Shown here one piece after another: positions 2,680-20,117 of a stretch of DNA of 64,000 nt (position 1 is the first letter of the stretch; each line of letters begins with the position of its first letter). The notes beneath the pieces were generated by a model, which had not been told where the DNA came from, ran no database searches, and saw nothing but the letters and a program-made list of their open reading frames with translations. The stretch lies in assembly GCA_025594325.1 (NCBI GenBank), contig JANHCV010000016.1, positions 1 to 64,000 on the forward strand. The letters run 5' to 3'. The translations under genes and the position numbers were made by a program. This DNA is from Blastocladiella emersonii ATCC 22665. Its lineage: Eukaryota; Fungi; Blastocladiomycota.

Positions 2680-4596
2680 TTACTCGGTCTTGGGCGCCTC
2701 CTCGGTCTTGTGCTCCTCGGCCTTATGCTCGGCCTCGGCGGGCTTGGCCTCCTCGGCCTTGGGCTCCTCAGCGGGGGCGGCGGCAGCGGCCTCCTCGTGC
2801 TTGGGCTCGGCCTCGGCGGCCTTGGGGGCCTCCTCGGTCTTGTGCTCAGCCTCAGCGGCGGGCTTGGCCTCCTCGACGGGGGCGGGGGCAGCGACCTCCT
2901 CGGTCTTGGGAGCCTCCCCGTGCTTGGGCTCCTCGGCCTTGGGGGCCTCCTCGACCTTGGCGGGCTCCTCGTGCTTGGCCTCCTCGGCGGGGGCGGCAGC
3001 AGCGGGCGCGGCCTCCTCGGCCTTGGGCGCCTCCTCGACGGGGGCAGCGGCGGCGGGGGCAGCAGCCTCCTCGACCTTGGCGGGCTCCTCGTGCTTGGGG
3101 GCCTCCTCGGCGGGCTTGGCCTCCTCGACGGGGGCGGCGGCGGCGGCGGGGGCAGCGGCGGCGGCGGGGGCAGCGGCGGCCTCCTCGTGCTTGAGCTCCT
3201 CGGCCTTGGGCTCCTCGGCAGCCTTGGCGGGCTCCTCGGCGGCCTTGGGGGCCTCCTCGACGGGCTTGGCCTCCTCGGCAACGGCGGCTGCGGGGACGGG
3301 GGCAGCGGCCTCGGCAACGGCCTCGATCGACTTGGCGGCGAGGTCGCGGGTCACCTCAGCGACGGCCTTGTCCTCGACGGGGGCGGCGGGGGCAGCGACG
3401 GCAGCGGGGGCGGCAGCAGGGGTCTCGGCCTCCTTCTTGGCCTTCTCGGAGCCGGCCTCGGGCTTGGCCTCGACGGCGTCGGCGTCGGGGGCGGGGACGC
3501 CGGGCCCGTTCGGGGAGGCGGCGCCGGCGTTGAGGTCGTTGTTCCACTTCTGGGCCTCCTCGAACTTGGCCTTGAAGCGCTGGGCAATGTCCGAGTTGGC
3601 AAAGCGCACGGCAAGCATCTCGGGCTTGACCTCGTCCTCGGAGAAGTCGGCGAGGGCGGTCCAGACCCACGAGCGGTCCGAGCCGACGTTGGGGTTGAGC
3701 TTCATCTCGGGGGCAATGACGTGGTTGGCGCAGATCTTGAGCGTCTTGTCGCGGCGCATCAGCACGCGCACCTTGCCCGACTGCTTGTGCATCATGAGGC
3801 GCATCTCGCCCGTGCCGCGCTCCTTCCACTCGGTCGTGGCCTTCTCGAACCGGAACAGCTTGGCGCGCCTGGATTATTCGGGGGAGGTTAGTGCTGGGTT
3901 AGTGCTGGGTTACGCGAGAAACGCGTCGCTCATAGCGTGGGAGACGCGCGGCACGTGAAAAGAAACGCACATCTTGAACAGGGGCGTCTCGTCGTCCTCG
4001 GCCGTCTTCACCTCCACCTTCTCGAGCTTGACCACGGGCTCGAAGTGGACATCGGGCTCAGTCTCGTCGGCCTTCTCCTACGGGGCGGCACGGGGGGAGG
4101 GGAGGGCGAGTCAGTACGACGCGTCTCGGTGACGTGGATCCAGGCGGGGAACGAGGGCAGGTCACAGCAGCAGCAGCAGCACGGGTAGCGAGCAGGTCCG
4201 TGGTCGAGGGTCTCGGTGCGACGCGAATTCGGCACCTCGGCTGGCTGGCTGGTGTGGGCGACGGGCGGCGCGTCGGTCGAGCCGCCGGCGGCCGTGTCAG
4301 CACGCTAGTTGGACACCGACGACGAGATGCCGGTACCCGTCCGAGTACGGCGGCCGAGTCACCCCAGAGAGCGGGCGGCGCGACGCGGACCCGATCCAAA
4401 CGAGTCGACTCGATTCGGTTCCGGACAGGGCGACGCGTAGACCGACGCGGCGGCGGGGGCCGCGTTCGCGCAAGACCGCGCTGGTACCGCTGCTGCTGCG
4501 GCTGTGACAGGTAGAGGGGATGAGCGCAACGGCGGCGACGTAGATGCTGACCTCCTCGTGGTGGGCGACAACGGTGGGCTCGTGGGCGTCAGACAT
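2680..4596 (-). CDS. YRB1: Ran-binding protein 1 (RanBP1/Yrb1) with a long Ala/Glu/Pro/Lys-rich C-terminal tail
   Basis: Spliced exons give [30 protein letters not shown]|[24 protein letters not shown]...KICANH...SDRSWVW, the RanBD signature; stop at 2682-2680. Confidence 0.92.
2685..3270 (-). repeat. Coding low-complexity imperfect tandem repeats in the RanBP1 tail
   Basis: Recurrent peptides [26 protein letters not shown] in the 2680..3804 ORF. Confidence 0.8.
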
Positions 4597-5572: not shown

Positions 5573-8500
5573 ATGGACAAGGTCAAGGCCGAGAATGAGC
5601 TGCTGCGCGAGCTGCTCATCGCCGCGCTCGCGTCCAAGTCGGACAAGGTCTCGGACATAGTTGCCGCCATCGGTCGCTCGAGGTCGCCCAACGGCGGCGG
5701 TGGCGGTGGCGACGGCGACTCGCATTCGTCGCAGCAGCAGCAGCCGCCCCCGTTGAACCCGCCTCCTGGACCCGGATCCAGCGGCGGCGGCGGCGGCGGC
5801 AGCGGCAGCGTGCACCCGTTGCTCCCGCACGCACAGCCGATCGACCGCGCACAACCGCTTCCGCCCGCGTCGCATCAGGGGCCGCCGCTCCACCCGCATC
5901 ACCACCCCTACGGCCACCAGCGCGCCAACGGGTACCGCCACGCCCACGTCGTCAACGACATCATTGCCAGCGCTGGACACGCGCCGCCCGCCGACTACGA
6001 CCAGCATCGCCCCTACGACTACGCGCAACCGCCCCCGCGCGCGTCGGCGCCCGCGCCGTCCGACCCGCACTTCCCCGCGCACGCGGCCTACCCGCCGCCG
6101 CTGGCTCACCGCCACGACGACCACGACTACTACCGGCACCGCGACCACGAGCCCTCGCCGCCGCCGTCGAGTCGCGCATGGCCGCACCACCCCGCTCCTC
6201 CTCGCCCACCACCGGCCCTGTCGTCGCACTTGGCGCAGCGCGACCACGAGCACTACGGCGACCCCTACCAGTACCCCGATCGGCCCCATCACCACCACCA
6301 CCACCACCATCCGCCGAGGAGGCCCGCGCCCGACGCGTCGATGCTGCGCCACGACTCGTACCCGAACGAGCACCCGCACTTTGCCTCCTCGGTCCCGCCT
6401 CCCGCCGCTTCGCGCGCATCGTCGTATCCGCGCCAGCACCGCGACGCGTCCGCGTACCCTCATCCACTGCCGCACGCGCGCGACGACCCCGTCTCCCACC
6501 GCCCGCCATCCCCCGCGTCTGCCTCTGGTCGTGAGTCGGCCGGCCCCATCCAGCCCACGCACGTCCTCGCCGCGCTCGAGCTCGTGAAACTCGGGCCCGA
6601 CGTCCTCAGCGGGCTCGGCGTCGACCACGAGACCATCGCCAAGCTCGCCACCAACCTCCAGTCCATCTCGGCGCAGTCCGCCCCGCCATCTCGTCCCCCG
6701 TCGGCGCCCGCGTCGTCCTCTACGCGCTCGGCGCAGCACGACGCGCTCGTCAACGGGCTCCGCCAGCTCACCGAGTCGCCCGCGCCCGGCTCGTCGGCCG
6801 CGTCGGACACGCACAGCCGCCTCGTCAGCCCCGCCGCCGCCGCGAGCGCGCCCATGGCACCGCCGTCGCGCCCGCCGTCGATTCCGCTCTCGTCATCGCA
6901 CGCCGTGCGCCGGCAGAGCAACCCGAGCCCGACCCCGCCGCCGCCGCGCATCATGGGCCTGCCGTCGACGCACAACCCGATGTTCGGCCACGCGTTCGCC
7001 GCTGCGGGCGCGCCCGCTCCGCCGCCGCCCGTGGTAGGCGGGATGCCCGCCGTGCGCACGACGCCGCGATCGATCCACCACGCGCCCGTGCAGCCGTCGC
7101 CGCTCTCGTCGCACTTTGACGCACACGATTTCGGCATGGGTACGGGGTCTGGTGCGGCGGACTCGGACGCGGCAGCGGCAGCGTCGGCCGCCGCCCGCGC
7201 GATGCACATCGCCGTCGACCGCGAGTTCCCCGGGCTCCACGTCGGCGTCCACGCGCCCAGCTCGTTCAACATCATGAATTTCGCCATGATGAACGGGGCC
7301 GATCTCGGGCTCGACTTTCTCAACGCCGCCGCCACGAGTCAGCCCGCGGACCCGGCGGCGTCGCAGTCGCAGCAGCACCGGTTTTCGGGCGCCGAGCCGA
7401 TGCAGGTTTCGGATCCGCCGTCCCAGCAGCAGCAGCTCAGTCTTGACGAGCTATGGCACGCGCCGCCGAACCTCGTCTCGACGTCGGCATCGCCCGCGCC
7501 GCCGCACCCGCACGCCGCGACCCCGACGCTCACCGACCCCATGGCCGTGTCGACGCCGCCACACCCGCATCCACAGCAGCAGCAGGACCAGTCCATGGAC
7601 GCGGCGACCGCCGCAGCCGCAGCCGCCGCGCAGGTGGCGCTCGACTCGCTGTTCCCCAACGACCCCTTCGCGCTGTGCGACCCGACCGCCGGCGGCACCA
7701 TCATGCCCGCGCAGCCGTCACTCTCGGGGTTCGGCCAGCACGACCCGTTCGGCCAGTACCCGCTCTTGGGCGCGGCCGCGCTCTACGACCCGGCCAACTG
7801 GGTGACGGACGCGTGGCTCGCGGCCGCGACCGCGGGACTGTCGGCCGGCGCGCCGCTCGCGGGCCCGGCGCCCCCGCCGCCGACGCCGGCCATGGCGAGC
7901 GTCTCGGCGGGTACGTCGCACGCCGCGTCGCCGTTCCTCACGGGGACCGGCCCGCTCGCTGCGTCTGGACTTGCTGGTTTCGCCTCGTCCCTGTCGAATC
8001 AGCAGCATCAACCGCATCAACAGCAGGCGCTCGCGAACCAGTCGTTTGACCCCTCGGCGTGCATGGCTGACCAGTCGTGGACCATGGCCGCCGACCCGTC
8101 GTCCTCGTCGTCGTCCTCGGCGCTGCCGCCCGCCGCCCAGCTTGGCGGCCCGTCCGCGTTCGCCGCGGACCCGCTGTCGATCGACGACGTCCAGGCCCAG
8201 CTCATGGCGATGCTCGATATCGAAGATTTCGCCGCCGTCGCCGCGACCGACACTGACCTCGCCGACCCGCGCCGCCGGCCCGTCGTCCCGATCGGCTTCG
8301 ACGACGAACCGCTTGGGTTCGCCGGCGCCGAGAGGTCGCGCCACCAGCTTCACCAGCAGCCGCCGACCATCGCCCCCGCGCGCATCATCAACGGCGGGAC
8401 CGCGGGCGGCGGGTCCACGAGCGGCCGCTCCGAGTCCGGCGCCGTCGCCCCGCGCCACCGCGTCCGCGGGCGAACCGCATCGGTTGTCGGCGCCACGGCC

Positions 8501-9983
8501 AATGACGCCATGGAGGCCGCCATGGCGGCCGCGGGGATCGGGAACGACGAGGACGGGGCGCCCGCACGGCCGCGCGCGGTCGGCGCGACGACGACGCGAG
8601 GTAAGCGCGGCCGCGCGGCCAAGAATCCGGACCGCAGGCACAACCCGCCGCGGCCGCCTGCCGTCGTCGTCGCTGCGTCGGACATGCTCGTGTCGACGTC
8701 CGCGTCGCCACCTCCGCCTCCTCAACCGCAGCAGCAGGAACAGCAGCAGCAGCACGAGGTCCGGCCGGCGTACCACGAGAACCCCTTCTTCCACCCGCCG
8801 TCGCACCAGCACCACCACCATCATCATCCGCAGTCGCAGCACGACCTCCCGCCGCTGCCACCACTACCGCCCTCTGTCGGCGGAGCACCCGAGCTTCCGC
8901 TCCAGCCCGCCGCGCCAGCACCAGCGCCGACACCAGCGCCCGCCAGCAGTCCCGGCGCGGGCGACGAGCTCGTCCTCGGCGCCAACGACGAGCCGCCCAA
9001 GCAGTGTGAGAACGAGAACTGCCGCGTGCAGTTCACGCCGCTGTGGCGCCGCGGGTTCAGCGACGAGATTTTGTGCAACGCGTGTGGGCTCTAGTACGGC
9101 TTCCCCTCGCTCGCGCCCGTCGCCACCCTCGCTGACCCTCGTCCCCCGTGTAGCGTCAAGCAAAACGGGCGCCACCGTCCGCGCGAGCTGTGCCGGCACC
9201 CGGCCAAGCCGCCGCCCGTCAACACCAACGTGTGCGCCAACTGCAACACGAGCGAGGCGTCCCTTTGGCGCAAGGGGTCGCAGGGCGAGTGCCTGTGCAA
9301 CGCGTGTGCCCTCTAGTACGCTTCTCCCTCGTGCTTCTTCGTTCAAACTCGCACTGATGTCCGATATCTGTAGCGAGAAGCTCCACAACAAGCACCGCCC
9401 GCCCGAGATCTACGCCAACAAGGTCGTCAAGCGGCGCAACCGCGCGCCCAAGCGCACCGCCGCGGCCGCCGCGCTCGACTCGTCGGCCGCCGCCGCTGAT
9501 GGCAGCTCCGCGTCCTCGTCGCTCACGTCCTCGTCCCCGTTGACCGCTGACGGCGACTCGCCCGTCCCGCCTAAGCCCAAGCGCAAGCGCGCCGCCGCGC
9601 CGCGCAAGCGGGCCACGACCGTCGCCGCTGCCGCCGCGGCTGCTGCTGCAGCTGCGTCTGGAGACCCCGCTCCCGCCGAGTCCTCGTCCGCGTCGTCGCC
9701 TACAACGGCGGTTTATACCCCGTCGCACCCGCACCACGCGCACCACGCGTACCCGCTCGCGCACCCTGCTTCCTCGGGCCCCGCGGCGCCGAACCCGGTG
9801 CTCGCGATCGCCGAGGCCGCTGCCGCCGCGGCAGCTGCGGCGTCGTCTTCGGCGGCGCCATCCCCGCTGTCGTCGCTCGCGGCCGCGGCCGCGCTGCCGT
9901 TCTTCGCCGCCCACGGCGCAGCAGCAGCGCCAAGGAGGCCGGACGGTGGTGACGATCCGGACGACGACATGGACACGAGCTAG
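5573..9983 (+). CDS. GATA-type transcription factor with two C-terminal zinc fingers and a very long Pro/His/Ala/Gln low-complexity N-terminus
   Basis: Finger 1 CENENC-X17-CNAC, intron 9094-9153, finger 2 CANC-X17-CNAC, intron 9316-9373, basic tail LHNKHRP...VVKRRNR; stop 9981-9983. Confidence 0.88.
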
Positions 9984-10115
9984 CCCGCTCCCGCCGCCGC
10001 CGGCCCTCCCTTCCTCGCGAGTTTTGATACATATCGCCCGCCCTCGTCTTGAATCCATAACTGCCTAGTGTATTCCTTCTTCTTCTTCTTCTTCCTCCCG
10101 TCCCGCGAACGAAAC

Positions 10116-13100
10116 TCAGTCATCCTCGTCGCCGCCCAGTAGCCCGCCACTCCCGCCGACGGGCCTGTACTCGCGCAGGACCGCGGGGACCGACGTGACG
10201 GGCACGACGCCGAGCTCGGTGACGACGGCCGTGAGGAACTCGGGCGGCGCCACGTCGAACAGGAGGTGCACGTACCCGGCGGCCTTACCCCCCTCGTCCT
10301 CGCCGCTGCCGCCGGCGGCGCCAGCGCCCAGCTCGTTGAACACCATCGAGTCGAGATGAATCGCGTCGGTGAACTTGTACGTCTCGCACGCGACCATGAC
10401 GGGGATATTCGCGCGGGCGGCCATGAGCGCGACGGCGGCGCTCCCGACGCCGCCAAGGAGCGCACCGTTGCCCAGCATCCCGTGCGCGCCGAGGACGACC
10501 TTGGTCGCCTCGCGCAGGGCGAACCCGAGCCCCGTCATGCACGCGTAGGTGACCTTGATCCCAGCGTCGAGGAGACCACGCGCGAGGGGGCGGCCGTGGA
10601 GCCACGGCCGGGCGTCGACGACCACGGCGCGGAACGGGGTGCCCGCGGCGTGCGCGGCGAGGAGGACCGCCTCGACCGTCGAGCTGTGGCCGAACGTCAG
10701 GACCACGTCGCCGGGCTTGATCTTGGCCCTTGCGTGCTCGGCAATCGCCGCGCGCGCGTGCGTGATGCGTTCCGCGACGTAGGTGTCGATCCCGGCGACG
10801 AGCCGCGCGCGCGCGTCGCCGTCGTGCAGGTCGGGCGGGAGGACCGAGATCGCGTGTTTCAGCGCGCGGATCGCGTTGCCCATGCCGGGCGACAGCGGCC
10901 GGGTCTCGGCCAGGTACGCAATGTGCGCGCCGAGGTACTGCGTCAGGTGCCGCGGCAGGACCGCGCGCGGCGGCGTCGTGTAGTCGGCGATCAGCTGGCG
11001 GAACGCGGCCAGCATCGCCGCGCACCGCTCGTTGGCCCCCGCGAGGTGCAGGTGCGCCGTCTTGAGCGCCACGGTGACGACGGACGGGTGCAGCGGGAAC
11101 CCGTTGCGCGTCACGGTTGCCGTGGCGGGGTTGGCCTGCGCGCGCGCCGCGATGGACGGCGGGAGGTGCGACAGGTTCAGCGACGACCCGCTGAAGCTCG
11201 CGGTGCTCCCGGCCCGCGAACCGAGCTTGGTCGCGGCGAGCGGGACGGGGACGCGCGCTGAGCCGGGGCGCGCGGACGCGGGCGTGCGGGGCACGTCCTT
11301 GGTCGCGATCCGCGGCGAGGACGCCGGCGTCGTCTTGCTGGCGGCGGTGACCACGGCCTTGGGCTTGCCGCTCGCGCTCGCGGTGGTGCCGGACGCCTTG
11401 GCGGCCTCCTTGGCCGCGCGCTGCGCCTCCTGGTACGCGCGCCGCTCCGCCTTGGTCATGTCCTTGGTCGACTGCTTCTGCGGGCGGCTACCGTCGGCGG
11501 CGGCGACCTTGGCCGGCGGAGCCGCCGCGGGCTTGGCGGGCTGCTCCTTGGCCGGCAGCGGCGCGACGAGCGCGGCGGTCTTGATCGGCGTGACGGCCTT
11601 CCCCGTGGCCGCGCGAGCGGGCTTGGGCGTCTCGTCGCCCGCGGGAGCATCGATCGACGGCGGCGCGACCACGGCGCCGTCCGCTTTACGCTTCCGCACG
11701 CTCGACGGCGACCCACCCGCTGGACTCGGCGGGCGCGGCACGGGCTTCGCGGACGACTCGCGCGACTCGCTCCACGCGCGGTCCCACACGGACTCGGTGC
11801 GCGCGGTCGACCGCCCACGCTCGTCCTCGGTTGCGGTCCCGAAAACGCTGTCGCGGTCGCGGTCGCGGTCGGGCGAGCGGGCGCGCGACGGCGACCGCGC
11901 TACAGCACCGGGCACGGAAAACTCCTTGATCTCGGGCCGGCGCTCGCCGGTCGCAATCGCAGCGTTATGCGCGATCGCCGCCTTGAACGCGGCGTGGAAC
12001 ACGTTGCTCGCGTCGGTAGTCCCGAGCCTGACAGCGACCGTGACGGCGGCGGGCGGGACGTGCAGGCCCGCGGCGAAATCGGCGAGCGAGTGCCACGACC
12101 AGCCCGTCATGGTGCCGAGGATCGGCATCGGGTGCATCGCGGGCGTGATGTAGTGGTTGATGGCGACGGCGCGGCGAGGCGAGGCGGGGGCCAGCGAGAG
12201 CGCTGGGTCGTCGAGGGACATCAGCAGGCGGACTTTGCCCGCGCCCGTCTCCGGGACCAGCAGCTGGATCTCGCCGCGGCCGAGCTGTTTCCATGACCGC
12301 GACGGTTTGTCGTACCGGTACCCGATGCCGCGGCTACAGCGGGACGGGTGAGACGAGGGGGTTTGGGGGAGGGGAGCTGGTGCGAGCGTACATTTCCAGG
12401 ATCGCGCGCTCTTTGACCGGAGACTGGTCGCGCAGAAGTCCTCGGGCCTACACGAGATTAGTGAGCCTCCGCGCAGGAAGAGCCACACCGAGTGCAGAAC
12501 CGTACCTCGGTGGGACTCGCCGGCCGAATCATCGCCCAGTCAACGGCGGCCACGTCCGGCTGCGGCGACGCGGGCGAGTTGACCTGCGACGGCGGCTGGA
12601 CATGGACCGCGGCCTTCCCGCTCGCGGCCGCCGCCGCACCGTCGGGCTGCGGTGCCGCAGGATCCGACGGCTGTGCGGCACCCGAGGACAGCTTCCCGTT
12701 CCACCGGGCAGCCTCCTCGAACTTGGTCTTGAACCGCGCGGCGACAGTGGCATCGCGGAGGCGGACCGCGAGCATGAGCGGCTCGGCGGGTCCGTCCGAG
12801 ACGTCGGCGAGGGCGGTCCAGGTCCACGCGCGGTCTGACTTGGCCATGGGCGCGAGCTTCATCTCGGGGAGCAGCAGGTGGTTGGCGCACACTTTGAGCA
12901 CCTTGTCGCGGCGCATCAGGACGCGGACCTTGCCCGTGGCGCGGTGCTTGAGGAACTTGAGCTCGCCGACGCCGCGCTCCTTCCATTCGCCGGCGAGGTA
13001 GCGGAAGAGTTGGGCGCGGCTACGGTGAGTGGGTGTCAGTTGTGGCCGTGTGAGGAAGGGAGGGAGGGAGGGGAAACGTACGCCTCGAAGATGGGATCCT

Positions 13101-15051
13101 CGTCCTCGTTCTCGAGCTTGACGCCGACGAGCTTGTCGAGCTTGACCACGGGCTCAAAGTGCACGTTGGGCTCCGACTCGTCAGCTTGGTCATTGTCGTC
13201 GTCGTCGCCTTGGTCGTCTGCGTCCGCATCGTCGGCCACCTTGACGGGTGCCGCAGCAGCAGCGGGCTTCGTAGCCTCGGCCGACGGCGACTTGCGCTCG
13301 GGCGTGGAGCCCTTGAGGAACGCGTGCCGCGTCTCGGGAACCGTCGGCGATGCCGGCTGAGATGCCGGCGCCGAGTCAGTGACCGCGGGCCACGCGAAGA
13401 CGGCCTGCGCGGGCGACTGCGGGAGGGCGATGGCCGCGACGGCCGGCTTGGGCTCGGCCACCGCTTCAGCACCCACTCCCGCCTCGGGCGTCGCCACAGG
13501 CACCGGCGTACCTGGCCCGCCCGGCACGGCGGTCCCCGCCGCGACCATCGCGTTCCACCGGGCAGCCTCGTTGAACTTGGCCGCGAACAGGTTAGCGACG
13601 TCGGCGTCGCGGACACGGATCGCGAGGGTCTGTGGTGCGACGACGCCGTCGGCGAAATCGGCGAGCGCGGTCCACACCCACGCGCGGTCCGACTTGGCCA
13701 TGGGCACGAGCTTCATCTCGGGCGTGATGAGGTGGTTGGCGCATACCTTGAGGACCTTGTCGCGGCGCATGACAAGGCGGATTTTGCCCGAGTCGCGGTG
13801 CATCAGCAGCCGCAGGTCCCCTGTGCCGCGTTCTTTCCAGTCGCCGCCAAGGTAGCGGTACAGGCGCGCACGGCTACAGGTGCGACGGGGGGTGCGGGTG
13901 AGAACGGGCGAAGTGAGGACAGGTGAGAGGGCGGCGTACATGGTGAGCAGCGTTGTCTCGTCGTCCGTCTCAGACTTGACCTCGACGAGCGTGTCGAGCT
14001 TGAGGACCGGCTCAAAGTGGACGTCGGGCTCGGTCTCGTCGGGCTGGTCGTCGTTGCCATCGGCCGCGTCGTCCTCGGTCGCGGGCTAGTTGACACGGTG
14101 CGTTAGCGAAGCACACATCGCCGACCCACGGCCACACGTACCGGCCCGCTCTTGTGCGGCGCGACGGGCGACGGCGGGAGCGCCGTATTGTTCGAGACCC
14201 ACTGTGCGGGCGCCGGTCCCGCCTTGTCGCTCGCGGACGTGGGCGAGTCGCCGAGCGAGACAGCCTCGCTGCTGACGGCGGGCACCGTGATCGCCGCGAA
14301 CCCCGCGACCGCGGCGGGCCCCTCCTCGTCGCCCGTGACGACCGCAGGCGCGCCAGGCCCACCCGGCGTCGCGGTCCCGGCGGCAATGCGGCGGTTCCAC
14401 TCCTTGGCCTCGTCGAACTTGGCGAGCATACGGTGCGCGGTGGCAGCGTCGCGGAGGCGGACGGCAAGGGTAACGGGTTCGGGCACGGCGGCGGCGCCGT
14501 CGCTGAGATCCGCGAGGGCGCGCCAGGTGAGGGCGCGGTCCGAGTTGATGATCGGGAGGAGCTTGAGCTCGGGCGCGACGTGGTGGTTGGCGCAGATCTT
14601 GTGGGTCTTGTCGCGGCGCATCACCAGGCGGACCTTGCCCGTGCGCGAGTGCATGAGCAGGCGCAGGGTGCCGGTCCCGCGCTCTTTCCATTCCTTGGCG
14701 GTCTTGGACTCGGGGACGGCGTACAGCTTGGCGCGGCTACATGTCAAGGCGTCAGACTCTAGGGAGTGACGTACGAGTGCAGGGCAAGACGGACACGACA
14801 AAGATCGGCTCCTCGTCCTCCTCGTTGGTCTTGACGTCGACGAGCTTGTCGAGCTTGAGGACGGGCTCAAAGTGGACGTCGGGCTCGGCCTCGTCGGCCT
14901 TTTCATCATCGTCGTCGCCTCCATCATCGGTATCCTGGACCTGCTTGGCCGGTGCTGGCGCAGCGAACAGCATCGACGCGGGTTTCCCACGGCCCGGCGC
15001 AGCAGCCGCGGGCGTCTCGGCCTTGGGAGCCGTCGTCGCCTTGGTCGGCAT
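10116..15051 (-). CDS. Chimeric protein: four tandem RanBD domains fused to an eIF2B-delta paralog (1525 aa, 7 exons)
   Basis: Exons 15051-14795, 14736-14142, 14085-13940, 13873-13082, 13019-12506, 12447-12392 and 12333-10116 join through GT..AG introns with branch-like CTRAC/CTAAY motifs; total 4578 nt, with phases consistent at every junction. Three WKERG(T/V)G RanBDs plus one degenerate copy precede the eIF2B-delta core (RPLSPGMGNAIR, CETYKF, FDVAPPEFL). Confidence 0.85.
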
Positions 15052-15268
15052 GGTGGGTCTGCAAGTGGTGTGCAGTGCAGAGCAAGTTGGCGCAAGAGGG
15101 GGAGCGAAAGTCACTCACGAAACGTGCGAACAGAAACGCGTCGCGACGCGTGCTCGCGTGATCCGTCGCCGTCGCGTTTTTCACTGTTCGTCGCGCTTTT
15201 CGCCGCGGTGATTACACAAAAAAGAGGGTTCGCTAGATTGATGGTAACAGACAGAGACTCGAGAAAGC

Positions 15269-16750
15269 TCAGCGGTGCGACTCGAGCAGCGGCTTGTACT
15301 CGCGCAGCACAACGGGGACCGAGGTGACGGGGACGAGGCCGAGCTCGGTGATGACGACGGTGAGGAACTCGGGCGGCGTCACGTCGAACAGGAGGTTGAG
15401 CGCCTTGAGCGGGGCCGCGCCCTTACTCGCTGGTCCCGTGGTCGCGACGGACCGCAGGAGGTCGGACGGGTCGCCGAGCTCGTTGAAGACGATCGAGTCG
15501 AGGTGGATCGCGTTGGAGAACTTGTACGTCTCGCAGGTGACGATGACGGGGATGTTGGCGCGGGCGGCGATGAGGGCGACCTGGGCGGACCCGGCGCGCG
15601 CGAGGAGGGCGCCGTTGGCGAGCAGGCCGTTGGCGCCGAGCAGGACCTTGGTGGCCTCGCGCATCGCGTACGCGACGCCGCTGATGAGCACGTAGGTGGT
15701 CGGGATCCCCGCGGCGAGCAGGGCGCGGGCCATGCGGCGGCCCTCGAGGCGCGGGCGCGCGTCCACGACAATGGCGCGGAACTTGCGGCCGCGGGCCTGC
15801 GCGGCGAGCAGCACGTGGCGCACCGTCGACGAGTGGCCGAACGTCAGGATCACGTCGCCGTCCTTGATCTTGGACACGCCGATCTCGGCGAGCCCGTGCA
15901 GCGCCATGGTGATGCGCTCCTGGATGAAGGTGTCAATGTGCTCGAGCAGCTGCTCCTTGGCGTCCTTGTCGGGGAGGTCCGGGGCGAGGACCGAGATCTC
16001 GTGCTTGAGCTGGCGGATGGCGCTGCCCATGCCGGGCGACAGCGGGCGGATGTCGGACAGGTACGAGATGTGGTTGCCGAGGTGCTGGGTGAGGTGGCGC
16101 GACAGCACCGCGTCGTTGGGCGTCGCGTAGTCGGCGATCAGGTTCTTGAACGCCTCGAGCATGGCGCGGCACCGCGCGTTGGACCCGCCCAGCCGGTTGT
16201 CGGCCATCTGCAGCCCGACCTGCACCACGGCCGGGTGCAGCGCGCGCGAGTGCGGACCCGACGCCGTGTACCCGGCGAGCTTGCGCTCGTGCAGCGGCGT
16301 CGGCAGGTGCGCGAACAGGGACATGGTCTTGCTCGCGGGCGCGGCCGCGGGGGCCGCGGTCCCCGGCCGCGTCAGGTTGCCGACCGACCCCGCGACCGAG
16401 CTGTTGGCGCGCAGCAGCGAGCTCGACGACCCGCCGAGCGCCGCCGTGGTGTCGGCAGCGGAGGATGGCGCAGCCTTGCTGTCACCACCAGCCGCGCCCT
16501 GCGCCGCCGCCTTCTTGCCGCCAGCCTGCGCGGAGGCACCCGCGGGCGCCTTGCCGCTACCGCCGGCGGCCTTCATGGCCTCCTTGGCGGCGCGCTGGGC
16601 CTCCTGGTACGCGCGGCGCTCGGCCTTGGTCATGTCCTTGGCCGACTTTTTGATGGGACGGCCCTCGGCGTCGAGCTGGATCGCGGGCGCGGCGGGCGCG
16701 GCGGCGGCGGAAGCGGGTGCCGGTTCGGCGGCTTGCTTTACGTTGCTCAT
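15269..16750 (-). CDS. GCD2: Translation initiation factor eIF2B delta subunit (intronless, 493 aa)
   Basis: TKAERRAYQEAQRAAK, LHPAVVQVGLQM, GSNARCRAML, RPLSPGMGSAIR, CETYKFS, FDVTPPEFL motifs of eIF2B-delta. Confidence 0.92.
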   Translation of the reverse strand: MSNVKQAAEPAPASAAAAPAAPAIQLDAEGRPIKKSAKDMTKAERRAYQEAQRAAKEAMKAAGGSGKAPAGASAQAGGKKAAAQGAAGGDSKAAPSSAADTTAALGGSSSSLLRANSSVAGSVGNLTRPGTAAPAAAPASKTMSLFAHLPTPLHERKLAGYTASGPHSRALHPAVVQVGLQMADNRLGGSNARCRAMLEAFKNLIADYATPNDAVLSRHLTQHLGNHISYLSDIRPLSPGMGSAIRQLKHEISVLAPDLPDKDAKEQLLEHIDTFIQERITMALHGLAEIGVSKIKDGDVILTFGHSSTVRHVLLAAQARGRKFRAIVVDARPRLEGRRMARALLAAGIPTTYVLISGVAYAMREATKVLLGANGLLANGALLARAGSAQVALIAARANIPVIVTCETYKFSNAIHLDSIVFNELGDPSDLLRSVATTGPASKGAAPLKALNLLFDVTPPEFLTVVITELGLVPVTSVPVVLREYKPLLESHR

Positions 16751-17020
16751 GGTGTCGATTGCGTAGCGGGTAGGGTGGTCGGGGTGCGTGGAGGAGAGCA
16801 GTGAAAGCCAGCTCGCGACGAACAGAAAGAGAGAGGAACGGCGATCCGTCACGCGAGCTCACCCGACGCGGTCCGGCGAGTCCGACGCGTGTTCTCCCCG
16901 CCCTGGCTCGAGTTCTCAGCACGGCCGCCCCGCCCGCCATCCGCCCTCCCGCACCCGGAACCGACTCTCTGCACTGCATCGACACCCTACCCCTAGCACG
17001 ACCCCCACACGACATCTGCC

Positions 17021-17957
17021 ATGGACATTGTATGTTGGCGCTACGCTACGCCGCGGCCCGCTGCTGCTGCGCGCGACCAGACGGCCTCCTGACGTCCCCG
17101 CTCTCTATGAACAGCAAACGCATACCCTGGTGCTCATGCAGCGCACCAACAAGCTGTCGTCGCGCATGTTCTACGACTACGAGAGCGTGTACGCGGCCAT
17201 GGAGGGCATCATCGCGCTGTTCGAGGAGAAGCTCAAGAACGAGCGCGCCAAGGTCGAGACCCTCAAGTACACGGAGAACGACGTCGAGGCCTTCATCGAC
17301 GACCTGGCCGACGTCGTGTGCCTCATGTGCGTTTCGACTCATCATCACCGCCTGATCACCACCCCTCGCGCTCACCTCCCGCCCCCTCCGACCCGCGTCT
17401 ATAGTCGCGAAGAACTCAGCCCCGGCGTGTACGGCTACGCGCCAAAGAACGCCGCGTGGCTCAAGCAGTTCATCCGCCCCGTGCTCGCCCGCAAGGCCGC
17501 CGCCCTCGCCAAGATCCACGGCGGCGCACCATCTTCCAGCAACGCCCGCGCCTCGTTCGGCACCCGCATGGACCACGGCGCGCCCGGCGGTGGTGGCCGC
17601 GGCGGCGCAGGAGGCCCGCGCAAGGGCGGCAACGGCAACGGGCACGGTAACGGCAACAAGGCGGCGACGGACGGCGACATTAACAAGCGGCTCGGGAACA
17701 AGGGCGGCAACAAGAAGGCCAACGCCGAGCCCGGCATCTTCGTCGTCCCATCAACCATCGGCAAGGGCGTGTCCAAGCGCAAGGGCGGCAACAAGGGCAA
17801 CGCCGCCGTCGACCTCTCGGGCAAGGGCGGCGTCCAGCTCATGACCCAGGCCTACGCCCAGAAGATGAACCTCGTCGGCAACGGCGCGTCCCTCGCCGGC
17901 GGCAACCGCGGTAACGGCAACGGCGGCGGTGGCGGCAAGGGCAAGAAGCGCCACTGA
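17021..17957 (+). CDS. ERH: Enhancer of rudimentary homolog with a Gly/Asn/Lys-rich C-terminal extension
   Basis: MDI|QTHTLVLMQ...RMFYDYESVYAAMEGIIALFEEKLK...FIDDLADVVCL matches ERH (HTILLVQ..YADYESVNECMEG..FIDDLADLSCL); introns 17030-17114 and 17327-17404. Confidence 0.88.
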
Positions 17958-18099
17958 TCAACGACTCGCTCGCCCGCTTCTCAACCTGAACCGTTTGGAC
18001 ACTCGTATGACAACCACAAAAAAAAATACATTTACAGATATCTGCACAACAACAACCAAACTAGTTAACTCTTGGCTCGCGTGTCCGTGCCCGGATCAA

Positions 18100-20117
18100 T
18101 CACTGCCCGAGGCGGCGACGCTTCATCGACAGCGGACCCGGCTTGTACGCGCCCTTGGCCTTGCGCTTGGACAGCCGCGCCGACGACCGCGTCGTGCGCG
18201 TCTCGCCCTCGCCCTCGTCGTCGTCGTCCGACGCCGGCGTGTCGGGGAACTCGGGCGTCGGCGGCTCGTCCGGCCGCTCGGCCGTCGGCGGCGTCGCGAT
18301 GCGGCGCTGGGTGCGACGCGTGGTCGGACGCACCACGACCATCTCCTCCTCCTCCTCCTGCTGCTCGAGCTCGTCCTCGTCGTCGCTGTCAGCGGCGATC
18401 GGCGTGGTCGACGCGGGACGGCTCGAGATGCGCGCCGAGCGGCGGGTGCCCGTCGAGCGGGACGACGACGACGCGGCGGGGGCGTCATCGTCGCTGTCGT
18501 CATCGTCGTCGTCCGTCGGCCCACTGCGGCGGCTGCGGCGGCCGCCCGTCGACCGGCGCGTGCCCGTCGTGGTCTCTCCGGCGTCCTTTGCGGCCTTCTG
18601 GCGGCGGAACGCCTCGACGCCCTGCACCGAGAGCTCCTGGAACTCCTCCTCGGAGAGCCCGCGGCCCGCGAGGACGGCAGCGCGGATCTCGGCCCACTGC
18701 GGGTCGGCAAACGTCTTGGGCAGCGACTCGAGCGGGGGCTGGCCGGGCTCGCGCTCGAGCGTGAACCGGTACACCTTGAACCCGGTCGGCCCGTCCTCGT
18801 ACGTCCAGTCGGTGCACTTGTACAGGCCGTCGTAGCGGTACAGGCCGTGCGGGGCGTGCTCGTAGCCGGACTTGGGCCCGCGGACCACGCGGATCGACCG
18901 GCCCAGGTCGTACGACTTGATGAAGGCCGCGTTGCGCGAGCTGAGCTCCATGTCCATGGTTTGCGGCGCTGTACGAAGGTTCTTTTCGGAGAGGGCGCGG
19001 CCGCCGCTGCCCGAGAAGATGATGCGGTCGCCCTCGTCGATGTCGCCGTCGTAGCCCTACAGCAGACCAGTCGTGATTAGCCTGATTTGGCAGCGAGGTA
19101 GCCGGAAAGACGTACCCCGTTGCAGGTAATCGACCACACGCCATATTCGTGGTGGCCCGCGATGCCAGGGACGAGACCACTGGAAGAGAGAACGAGTCAG
19201 TCGTATCCGGCGACCTCCGTCGCGATGAGTGCGCCGTACCGGTGAACGCCAGCTTCCTACACATCCGCAAAGCGTCATTCGTGAGCAATTTGTAGCGGTG
19301 GAGGTCCACGGAGGTGAGTCGCACATGAGCGCACTTGCGGAACCCGAACAGCGAGCCGACGGGCACGTTGGGGATCGGGCCAAACTTGCGCTTGGCCGGG
19401 GACGGCTCCTTCTTCATGATCTCGTACGGCAGCGAGAAGAAGAACGTGTCCGACTTGGCGTCGTGGGCGAGCATCTGCTTGCGGCGGATCTCGCTGCGCG
19501 ACGCCGCGCTACCGTCCTCGTCCTACATCGAGTGTTCACGCTGTGTCAGGGGGGCATTGCAACGGGTCGAAAGAGCAGCTCACGTACGAGCTCCATGAAC
19601 TCCTCGTCGTCGTTGGAACGAGAGGCGCGGGTACGACCGAGCTTCGCCGCGGTGCGGCCGCGGGCAGCACTGCGCAGCGTGCGAGGAGCGGGCCGCTCGC
19701 TCGCGGCGTCGTACTCGTCGTCGTCGTCGTCGTCACCAGCAGCGCGCCGGCGGCGAGTCTGCTTGGCCGCGGGTGCGGAAGACGTCGAACTGGACGAGCG
19801 AGCCAGCGTCGAGACAGAGTCAATCGCTATACCAAGAATAGAGTCAGCGACGAGCTACAGACTAAGCGAGTACGACTGACAGTACAGGCAGTGGCGAGAA
19901 GATCGCGCATGCGATCCATGTTGCGCTGGCGGCGAGCCGCAAGGTCCTCCTCGCCTTCATCATCCTCGTCCTCGTCCTCGTCCTCGTCCTCTGCGGGCTC
20001 CTCCTGGGCGACCTCGTCGTCCGAGCTCTGGTTCTCGGGCTGCGTCACGGCCGCAGCGTCGGCAGCGTCGTCCGATTCATCGTCGCGACGCGCGGGCAGG
20101 TTCTTAAAGCGTGGCAT
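18100..20117 (-). CDS. SRA/YDG domain protein with acidic N-terminus and Arg/Ser/acidic tail
   Basis: Spliced FGPIPNVPVGSLF..CAH|EAGVHR|GLVPGIAG..WSITCNG|GYDGDIDEGDRIIFSGSGG..IRVVRG..YRYDGLY is a canonical SRA domain; includes a 17-nt microexon. Confidence 0.87.

What the first reader, a model, noticed from the sequence alone, without database searches (positions are those of the whole stretch)
10116..15051. Four tandem Ran-binding domains fused to a second eIF2B-delta in one 1525-aa spliced ORF
Seen: ORFs the track shows as separate join through six GT-AG introns into one uninterrupted frame (4578 nt), RanBD1-RanBD2-RanBD3-RanBD4-linker-eIF2B-delta. The delta part is clearly diverged from the neighbouring canonical gene yet has no stops or frameshifts and keeps the TKAERRAYQEAQRAAKEA, RPLSPGMG and CETYKF motifs, which suggests selection. 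Known: four RanBDs is the architecture of animal RanBP2/Nup358, while fungal RanBD proteins (Yrb1, Yrb2, Nup2) carry one; eIF2B is the GEF for eIF2 and the target of the integrated stress response. I know of no RanBD-eIF2B fusion. Inference: an alternative delta subunit could tether eIF2B to RanGTP/export complexes or the nuclear periphery and couple nuclear export to translation restart, for example during activation of stored ribosomes in zoospores.
Basis: partly seen in the sequence, partly recalled or inferred. Interest (0 to 1): 0.9.

Follow-up and report, generated by a model that had tools for sequence, protein, structure and literature searches.

The report
Four-RanBD plus eIF2B-delta fusion gene
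In the water fungus Blastocladiella emersonii, one seven-exon gene joins four Ran-binding domains to a complete, still-constrained second copy of translation factor eIF2B-delta, a combination found in no other protein searched, but no RNA data were available to show it is made as one protein.

Summary
On the minus strand, 15051-10116, six GT-AG introns (56-66 nt) join seven exons into a 4578-nt frame of 1525 aa. It is identical to NCBI's model H9P43_009841 of Blastocladiella emersonii ATCC 22665, which was predicted without RNA data.

- **Domains:** Pfam finds four RanBDs (three strong, the fourth degenerate) and one IF-2B domain.
- **Delta part:** it is a full-length paralogue of the neighbouring GCD2, 54% identical. 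It keeps 65 of 73 highly conserved delta columns and has omega about 0.12 against GCD2, with omega = 1 rejected.
- **Linker:** the 150-aa linker looks translated in the same frame, shows no intergenic GC dip and holds no candidate intron. No in-frame ATG precedes the conserved delta N-motif.
- **Uniqueness:** no other protein among those examined combines RanBD and IF-2B.
- **Relative:** B. britannica has an orthologous four-RanBD protein with no detectable delta domain, so the fusion looks specific to the B. emersonii lineage.
- **Altered residue:** the fused delta has His where human L314 / yeast L381 lies, a position whose mutation desensitises eIF2B to phosphorylated eIF2.

No RNA run could be listed, so a single transcript and any function remain inferred. 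Other notes of this scan cover the same stretch of this genome; none concerns other DNA.

The parts
10116..15051 (-). Whole CDS of the fusion gene (7 exons, 1525 aa, stop included) = NCBI H9P43_009841
14361..14904 (-). RanBD1 (aa 50-211), interrupted by intron 1 (14794-14737) just before RAKLY
   Evidence: Pfam 95.6 bits; domain limits
13519..14049 (-). RanBD2 (aa 297-451), interrupted by intron 3 (13939-13874) at the same phase-2 position
   Evidence: Pfam 116.9 bits
12665..13191 (-). RanBD3 (aa 561-715), interrupted by intron 4 (13081-13020) at the same phase-2 position
   Evidence: Pfam 120 bits; PDB hits Yrb1 and RanBP1 at E 1e-40 to 1e-42
11931..12432 (-). Degenerate RanBD4 (aa 774-921) with intron 6 (12391-12334). 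It lacks the EPDVHFEP arm, has WKERG changed to WKQLG and MRRDK to MSLDD, and carries a roughly 10-aa insertion
   Evidence: Pfam 36.2 bits; alignment; PDB E 6e-9; clade with B. britannica RBD4 at 98/96
11487..11930 (-). Ser/Pro/Arg/Asp-rich linker (aa 922-1069). It has no in-frame Met and contains RKRK (aa 1000-1003, 11696-11685), a possible nuclear localisation signal
   Evidence: In-frame GC3 0.88 against 0.72 and 0.68 at positions 1 and 2, p<0.001; codon log-likelihood +0.29 bits per codon in frame against -0.65 to -0.92 out of frame; no GC dip; no candidate intron
11403..11486 (-). Conserved eIF2B-delta N-terminal motif RPQKQSTKDMTKAERRAYQEAQRAAKEA. The only possible internal start, M1079, lies at 11459-11457
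   Evidence: Alignment with the canonical copy extends 9 aa upstream of this Met; Met positions
10200..11042 (-). IF-2B domain of the fused delta (aa 1218-1498). His1312 (10760-10758) lies at the position of human L314 / yeast L381
   Evidence: Pfam 194.8 bits; PDB delta chains 5b04_G and 6caj_F at E 1e-75 to 1e-78; column analysis
15272..16750 (-). Canonical single-exon eIF2B-delta (GCD2, 493 aa), 218 nt upstream on the same strand. Probable source of the fused copy
   Evidence: Pfam 252.7 bits; 54% identity over 474 aa; P0001
2680..4077 (-). Single-RanBD RanBP1-like gene. It has the same phase-2 intron before RAKLF and is 59% identical to RBD1-3

Best explanation
This is a real chimeric gene of Blastocladiella emersonii. 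An older four-RanBD gene (three competent RanBP1-type domains and one degenerate one, also present in B. britannica) acquired a complete copy of the neighbouring eIF2B-delta gene as its 3' end. The copy lost its own start codon. The locus is now read as one 1525-aa protein: RanBD1-3, RanBD4*, a disordered linker of about 150 aa, then full-length delta. What is shown: the joined frame, the domain content, coding-type sequence through the linker, purifying selection on the delta part, and the uniqueness of the architecture among the proteins examined. What is inferred: because delta keeps its conserved core and delta subunits elsewhere tolerate very long N-terminal extensions, the protein most likely enters eIF2B as an alternative delta subunit. 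That would put up to six working RanGTP-binding domains on the decamer. These could hold eIF2B on RanGTP-loaded export or importin complexes near the pores, or make it responsive to RanGTP. The His at the L314/L381 position suggests that complexes carrying this subunit are less inhibited by phosphorylated eIF2. The confidence given is for the single translated, selected fusion gene; the alternative-subunit mechanism on its own I put at about 0.3.
For: - **Gene model:** it is exact and equals the public model.
- **Domains:** four RanBDs and IF-2B are above Pfam's thresholds.
- **Composition:** GC falls to 0.52-0.53 only at 10000 and 15200, the true intergenic spacers, and stays at 0.66-0.79 through the linker.
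- **Linker coding signal:** in-frame GC3 is the highest position in every 40-codon window of exon 7. In the linker, position 3 exceeds positions 1 and 2 at p = 8e-4 and 3e-5. The codon-usage score is +0.29 bits per codon in frame, negative in the five other frames and in intergenic DNA.
- **No hidden split:** exon 7 has no candidate intron. There is no in-frame Met between aa 862 and 1079, and homology to GCD2 runs 9 aa upstream of M1079.
- **Delta conservation:** 65 of 73 highly conserved columns are kept, inside the 83-100% range of the other 24 delta sequences compared.
- **Selection:** omega is 0.12 against GCD2, with lnL -1779.1 against -1820.9 at omega = 1. A three-taxon GY+F3X4 model gives omega 0.04.
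- **Orthology of the RanBD part:** B. britannica has the same 3+1 layout, a shared RBD4 insertion and the same intron position.
- **His1312:** the other 24 deltas have only hydrophobic residues there. L314Q/L381Q desensitise eIF2B (PMC7837216).
- **Tolerance of extensions:** delta proteins with N-terminal extensions over 1000 aa exist elsewhere.
Against: - No transcript evidence: no RNA run was listed, no transcript-derived protein was found, and the public model is ab initio, so it is not independent of the sequence signals used here.
- The fusion is seen in one species only. The B. britannica orthologue has no detectable IF-2B domain.
- The fused delta evolves faster than the canonical copy (ML branch 0.93 against 0.14). 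It has unusual replacements at conserved sites: F1174L, E1366H and R1415G.
- An open frame over the linker alone has roughly a 1 in 8 chance at this GC content (my estimate).
- Assembly into eIF2B, Ran binding and localisation are all untested.
Confidence: 0.55

Rival explanations
1. One locus gives two products. Besides, or instead of, the long fusion protein, an internal promoter in the linker gives an mRNA translated from M1079 (MTKAERR...). This makes a stand-alone second delta of about 447 aa, and the fusion is a minor or read-through form.
For: M1079 sits directly before the conserved N-motif, so a product starting there would keep every conserved part of delta. There is no RNA evidence either way.
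Against: The linker has coding-type codon usage and GC3 periodicity in the same frame and no intergenic GC dip. Protein homology to GCD2 continues upstream of M1079. The upstream RanBD frame has no stop before 10116 and exon 7 has no candidate intron. Any translation started at 15051 therefore runs into delta.
Confidence: 0.17
2. The gene is a young evolutionary accident on its way out. A local duplication glued a GCD2 copy to the RanBD gene. The chimera is tolerated, does not work in eIF2B, and is under relaxed constraint; the degenerate RBD4 and the odd delta residues are signs of decay.
For: The fusion is found in one species only. The fused delta branch is longer (0.93 against 0.14). There are unique replacements at columns conserved in 21-23 of 24 deltas. 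RBD4 is degenerate.
Against: Synonymous sites between the two copies are near saturation: dS is about 2, and the same codon is used at 127 of 184 positions against 106 expected at random. Even so, there is no stop or frameshift in 4.6 kb. Omega is 0.12 and omega = 1 is rejected. Conserved columns are kept at 89%. Codon bias is maintained, with GC3 0.93-0.98. RBD4 was already degenerate in the ancestor shared with B. britannica and has been kept in both species.
Confidence: 0.15
3. The delta domain has a new role. It no longer joins eIF2B but serves as a dimerising or scaffolding module for a soluble multi-RanBD protein, a cytoplasmic stand-in for Nup358-type clustering of RanBDs.
For: IF-2B-fold proteins form dimers and higher assemblies, and PDB relatives include homo-oligomeric ribose-1,5-bisphosphate isomerases. 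Residues at the eIF2(alphaP)-sensing position and other conserved columns have changed. The B. britannica orthologue carries a different C-terminal region of about 390 aa after RBD4, so this position may simply need some C-terminal module.
Against: The conserved N-terminal delta motif and 89% of delta-specific conserved columns are retained, which is hard to explain if the eIF2B contacts were lost. The best structural relatives are delta chains over their full length.
Confidence: 0.12
4. It is an assembly or annotation artefact that joins two unrelated genes.
For: The public model is ab initio only.
Against: Contigs assembled separately from other runs of the same sample (X1, X2, X3) match the window without differences over most of 10105-15400. 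The stretch 11116-11613 rests on X1 alone in the pieces shown. The published assembly is PacBio HiFi polished with Illumina reads. Exon 7 alone, one uninterrupted exon, already contains RBD4, the linker and delta.
Confidence: 0.02

Closest known systems
eIF2B delta subunit (yeast GCD2, human EIF2B4)
   Same: It has a full-length match to solved delta chains: S. pombe 5b04_G at E 1.6e-78 and human 6caj_F at E 4.8e-75, covering residues 96-517. The N-terminal KAERRAxQExQRAAK motif, RPLSPGMGNAIR and CETYKF are present. It sits inside the Blastocladiomycota delta clade (100/99).
   Different: It carries about 1070 extra N-terminal residues with four RanBDs and has no start codon of its own. It has His instead of a hydrophobic residue at the L314/L381 position, plus E1366H and R1415G. 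Its ML tree branch is about six times longer than that of the canonical copy next door (0.93 against 0.14).
RanBP1 / Yrb1 (single-RanBD co-activator of RanGAP)
   Same: RBD1-3 are RanBP1-type domains with the acidic arm plus HFEP, the EWKERG motif and the basic RRDK patch. They match Yrb1 and RanBP1 at E 1e-40 to 1e-42. They are 59% identical to the RanBP1-like gene 6 kb away and share its intron position.
   Different: There are four domains in tandem in one chain. The last lacks the arm and the conserved motifs. The chain is fused to a translation factor.
RanBP2 / Nup358 of animals
   Same: It has four RanBDs in one polypeptide. Animal RanBP2 proteins are the highest-scoring long hits.
   Different: It has no TPR or leucine-rich N-terminal anchor, no zf-RanBP fingers, no IR1-M and no cyclophilin domain, and only 2 FG dipeptides. 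In the RanBD tree, RBD1-3 lie next to the local RanBP1-like genes and outside the clade holding the animal RanBP2 domains, though that part of the tree is poorly resolved. The four-domain count therefore looks convergent.
B. britannica BC828DRAFT_405547 (P0210, 1135 aa)
   Same: It is the orthologue of the RanBD part: three good RanBDs plus a degenerate fourth with the same insertion and the same intron before it. The two RBD4s form a clade at 98/96. A RanBP1-like gene lies a few kb away in both species.
   Different: Its C-terminal region of about 390 aa has no detectable IF-2B domain: Pfam finds none, hhalign gives E 0.2, and an HMM score is no better than shuffled sequences. Its canonical delta lies on another contig.

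Membership tests
RanBD (Pfam PF00638) proteins | Match to the Ran_BP1 profile above the gathering score | tested here: met
   Four stretches. On the exon pieces the scores are 95.6, 116.9, 120 and 36.2 bits against a cut-off of 23.2.
RanBD (Pfam PF00638) proteins | Ran-contacting elements: N-terminal acidic arm with HFEP, the EWKERG motif and the basic RRDK patch | tested here: met
   All are present in RBD1-3. All are absent or altered in RBD4 (no arm, WKQLG, SLDD).
RanBD (Pfam PF00638) proteins | High-affinity binding of RanGTP | not testable with these tools
   Needs a pull-down or ITC with Ran(Q69L)-GTP.
RanBP2 / Nup358 | Four RanBDs in one chain | tested here: met
RanBP2 / Nup358 | N-terminal TPR or alpha-helical pore anchor, zf-RanBP fingers, FG repeats, IR1-M and a cyclophilin domain | tested here: not met
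   Pfam on P0009 lists only Ran_BP1, IF-2B and a sub-threshold WH1 hit. There are 2 FG dipeptides. It is not a member.
RanBP2 / Nup358 | RanBDs related by descent to the animal RanBP2 domains | tested here: inconclusive
   RBD1-3 lie next to the local RanBP1-like genes and outside the clade holding the animal RanBP2 domains, but the backbone of the tree is poorly resolved.
eIF2B delta (GCD2/EIF2B4) | IF-2B domain above the Pfam threshold, with delta chains as best structural relatives over the full length | tested here: met
   194.8 bits against a cut-off of 22.4. 5b04_G and 6caj_F match at E 1e-75 to 1e-78.
eIF2B delta (GCD2/EIF2B4) | Delta-specific N-terminal basic motif KAERRAxQExQRAAK | tested here: met
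   The motif is identical to that of the canonical copy.
eIF2B delta (GCD2/EIF2B4) | Placement within the delta clade of its own phylum | tested here: met
   The Blastocladiomycota clade has 100/99 support. The position relative to the two canonical Blastocladiella copies is unresolved (AU p 0.36).
eIF2B delta (GCD2/EIF2B4) | Regulatory residues that sense phosphorylated eIF2 (human E310 and L314) | tested here: inconclusive
   The Glu is kept (E1308). The Leu position is His1312, where the other 24 deltas have L, M, F, V, A, I or Y. The role of these residues is taken from PMC7837216. The effect of His has not been measured.
eIF2B delta (GCD2/EIF2B4) | Assembly into the eIF2B decamer with alpha, beta, gamma and epsilon | not testable with these tools
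   Needs co-purification or multimer modelling.

The most novel reading that the evidence does not exclude
B. emersonii makes a second kind of eIF2B in which the delta subunit is covalently tied to three working RanGTP-binding domains and carries a natural desensitising change (Leu to His at the L314/L381 position). This would be a direct physical link between the Ran nuclear-transport system and regeneration of the eIF2 ternary complex. It could place stress-resistant eIF2B at sites where RanGTP-bound export complexes leave the nucleus, for instance when the ribosome-filled nuclear cap of the zoospore is released at germination.
Probability: 0.2. Interest if true: 0.8.

Novelty: new variant of a known kind. 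Interest (0 to 1): 0.55.

Why it matters
Domain fusions often reveal functional links between pathways. No link between RanGTP-binding modules and eIF2B, the control point of the integrated stress response, turned up in the literature searches or in the protein databases.

If the protein is made and joins eIF2B, it would be a natural experiment in tethering translation initiation to nuclear export. It would also be a natural variant at a residue known to set sensitivity to phosphorylated eIF2.

The finding also shows that multi-RanBD proteins arose in a fungal genus independently of animal Nup358. If the fusion is not expressed as one protein, it is still a clean example of how a local duplication creates a chimeric open reading frame.

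Tried and rejected
- **RNA evidence:** no RNA run was listed for the locus; only three DNA runs of one sample were found. No transcript-derived protein covers the junctions, and no other contig encodes the protein.
- **Genome-contig scan:** useless here, because the collection holds only bacteria and archaea.
- **Hidden delta in B. britannica:** by eye the C-terminus of P0210 looked like a decayed IF-2B domain, for example LDQYYSAHLDYLT..P..PG..AIR. This is not supported. Pfam finds nothing at E 10. BLASTP gives one 29-aa local match at E 0.012. hhalign gives E 0.2 and probability 0.3%. Smith-Waterman z scores are 0.4-3.4 against four deltas. tblastn on the locus finds nothing. The HMM score is -2.5 bits, reached by 421 of the 1253 shuffles that were scored. 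The atlas search returned only compositional look-alikes. The single-sequence AlphaFold model is unusable at pLDDT 36. I treat this as an open lead only.
- **Nei-Gojobori dN/dS:** the value of 0.65 is rejected as misleading. At GC3 near 0.95, pS saturates near 0.4, so I used an ML codon model with F3x4 frequencies instead.
- **Three-point branch dS values:** meaningless because comparisons with B. britannica are saturated.
- **First codon-usage run:** it included one mis-framed training sequence and was repeated correctly.
- **Timing of the duplication:** unresolved. The tree puts the fused delta outside the two canonical copies (94/83), but the alternative is not rejected (AU p 0.36). The lower dS to the B. 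emersonii copy (2.1 against more than 9) points the other way.


Full report
**What is in the sequence**

On the minus strand an ATG at 15051 opens a frame that continues through six short GT-AG introns to a stop at 10116. The introns are 58, 56, 66, 62, 58 and 58 nt. Five have GTACG-type donors and one has GTCCGT; all end in TAG and most have a CTxAC-like branch site.

The window is part of contig JANHCV010000016.1 of Blastocladiella emersonii ATCC 22665 (GCA_025594325.1). There the same gene is annotated with a 1525-aa product, 'hypothetical protein H9P43_009841'. That protein (P0009) is identical to my reconstruction.

The annotation was made with funannotate from ab initio predictors, with no RNA-seq mentioned (PMC9730499). 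It therefore agrees with the model but is not independent evidence of a transcript.

The DNA itself is sound. A 16-kb contig of run X1 matches 10105-15400 with no difference. Contigs of two other runs of the same sample cover most of the stretch, including 11754-14333.

**Domains**

Pfam finds four Ran_BP1 stretches and one IF-2B domain at aa 1218-1498.

- **RBD1-3.** They are 59-64% identical to each other and 59% identical to a single-RanBD, RanBP1-like gene that lies 6 kb away at about 4077-2680 on the same strand. That gene has an intron at the same phase-2 position, just before RAKL(F/Y), as each of the four RanBDs. RBD3 matches yeast Yrb1, human RanBP1 and the RanBP2 domains at E 1e-37 to 1e-42.
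- **RBD4.** It is degenerate: 32-40% identical to the others, no acidic arm or HFEP segment, WKERG changed to WKQLG, MRRDK to MSLDD, and a roughly 10-aa insertion.
- **No Nup358 features.** Nothing else typical of Nup358 is present, and there are only two FG dipeptides.

**The delta part**

From RPQKQSTKDMTKAERR onward the protein aligns with the canonical, single-exon eIF2B-delta gene located 218 nt upstream (15272-16750, minus strand). Identity is 54% over 474 aa.

It also aligns with the solved delta subunits of S. pombe and human over their full length.

It keeps 65 of 73 columns that are at least 85% conserved in 24 other deltas. This is inside the 83-100% range those sequences show against each other.

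A simple Nei-Gojobori ratio of 0.65 is misleading, because synonymous sites are nearly saturated at GC3 about 0.95. A maximum-likelihood codon model with F3x4 frequencies gives the following against the canonical copy:

- omega 0.12, dN 0.25 and dS 2.1;
- omega = 1 rejected (lnL -1779.1 against -1820.9).

A three-sequence model gives omega 0.04. The refuting outcome 'dN/dS near 1' is therefore not met.

The fused copy does evolve faster than its neighbour, with ML tree branches of 0.93 against 0.14. It has unusual residues at four conserved columns: F1174L, E1366H, R1415G and His1312.

His1312 aligns with human L314 (residue number counted from that alignment). The other 24 deltas have only hydrophobic residues there. 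Human L314Q and yeast GCD2 L381Q make eIF2B insensitive to phosphorylated eIF2 (PMC7837216).

**One gene or two?**

An open frame means little at 75% GC, where long ORFs occur in all frames. I estimate roughly a 1 in 8 chance that the linker stays open by accident. Other signals are more telling:

1. GC content in 100-nt windows falls to 0.52-0.53 only in the true spacers at 10000 and 15200. It stays at 0.66-0.79 through the linker.
2. GC3 in the annotated frame is the highest codon position in every 40-codon window of exon 7. In the linker, position 3 exceeds positions 1 and 2 at p = 8e-4 and 3e-5.
3. A codon-usage score trained on 2758 codons of neighbouring genes gives the linker +0.29 bits per codon in frame. 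The score is negative in all five other frames. Flanking domains score 0.37-0.42, and intergenic DNA scores -0.7 to -2.2.
4. No candidate intron lies inside exon 7, so a ribosome that starts at 15051 has no stop before the end of delta.
5. There is no in-frame Met between aa 862 and 1079. The only possible internal start is the Met inside KDMTKAERR, and similarity to the canonical protein continues nine residues upstream of it.

Together these favour a single translated fusion. They cannot exclude an additional internal transcript. No RNA run could be listed and no transcript-derived protein was found.

**Relatives and history**

An exhaustive phmmer search with exon 7 found 4584 IF-2B-type proteins. 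Among the best 150, only P0009 itself contains RanBDs. A search with the whole protein returned 82 long RanBD proteins, mostly animal RanBP2, and none has an IF-2B domain. Eight delta proteins longer than 950 aa carry no RanBD.

One hit is informative: B. britannica BC828DRAFT_405547 (P0210, 1135 aa). It has three good RanBDs and a fourth degenerate one with the same insertion. The intron sits at the same place before RBD4. The two RBD4s form a clade at 98/96, although both are long branches.

RBD1-3 group by species, which fits concerted evolution within each species. The four-RanBD gene therefore predates the split of the two species.

After RBD4, however, the B. britannica protein continues with about 390 aa in which no IF-2B domain can be detected by any method I could apply. 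Its canonical delta lies on another contig.

The delta tree places the fused copy inside the Blastocladiomycota clade. Whether it branched before or after the two canonical Blastocladiella copies separated is unresolved. The much lower dS to the B. emersonii copy favours a later, lineage-specific duplication, though differences in codon usage between the species weaken that argument.

The simplest history is a local duplication of GCD2 whose copy landed behind, and became part of, the neighbouring four-RanBD gene.

**Mechanism (inferred)**

Three facts make entry into eIF2B as an alternative delta subunit the most likely mode of action:

- The delta part keeps its conserved core and its N-terminal motif.
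- Delta N-termini are long and variable in other organisms.
- The linker has the low-complexity composition expected of a flexible tether.

Each decamer would then carry up to six competent RanGTP-binding domains. His1312 suggests reduced inhibition by phosphorylated eIF2. The RKRK motif in the linker could be a nuclear localisation signal.

None of this was tested, and the zoospore or nuclear-cap idea is speculation. Three rivals remain: an internal promoter giving a stand-alone delta, a tolerated but functionless chimera, and a delta domain reused as an oligomerisation module. I give them 0.17, 0.15 and 0.12.

**Verdict**

The architecture is unique among the proteins examined, and I found no paper describing it. 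The protein is already deposited as an unnamed hypothetical protein.

It is a new combination of two well-known modules, seen in one species and without expression data. I rate it moderately high in interest, pending a simple RT-PCR or long-read cDNA test.

Noticed in passing
window 2680-4077 (-): The RanBP1-like gene next door has one RanBD followed by a tail of about 270 aa made of Ala/Glu/Pro/Lys repeats ([16 protein letters not shown]). That is unusual for RanBP1/Yrb1. It shares the phase-2 intron position with all four RanBDs of the fusion gene. The B. britannica counterpart is very similar over the RanBD by eye (not computed), and its annotated product is only 141 aa.
   Followed up: partly
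P0003 (GenBank BAK01674.1, filed as Hordeum vulgare): A 496-aa 'barley' cDNA-derived eIF2B-delta falls inside the Blastocladiomycota clade (100/99). It is 53% identical to both B. emersonii deltas. It is probably a blastoclad-like fungal contaminant or associate in the barley cDNA library, not a plant gene.
   Followed up: partly
L002 10001-13721 (B. britannica MU624784.1): The C-terminal region of about 390 aa of the four-RanBD protein P0210 matches no Pfam family. It has one weak, co-linear local match to the RPLSPGMGNAIR region of delta (E 0.012 pairwise, hhalign E 0.2). This could be chance or the last trace of a decayed delta domain.
   Followed up: yes
window 10075-10100 (-), just after the stop codon: A (GAA)n purine tract (aggaagaagaagaagaagaagg) lies in the low-GC 3' flank of the fusion gene.
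   Followed up: no
window 14737-14794 (-): Intron 1 has a non-consensus donor (GTCCGT), whereas the other five introns have GTACG. A stronger GTACGT lies 21 nt inside intron 1 (about 14773) but is out of phase. Retaining intron 1 would end the protein after 100 aa (stop codon at 14754-14752).
   Followed up: partly
window 8000-19000, both strands: At 70-76% GC, ORFs of 150-670 aa occur in almost every frame and overlap real genes. ORF length alone is no evidence of coding in this genome.
   Followed up: yes
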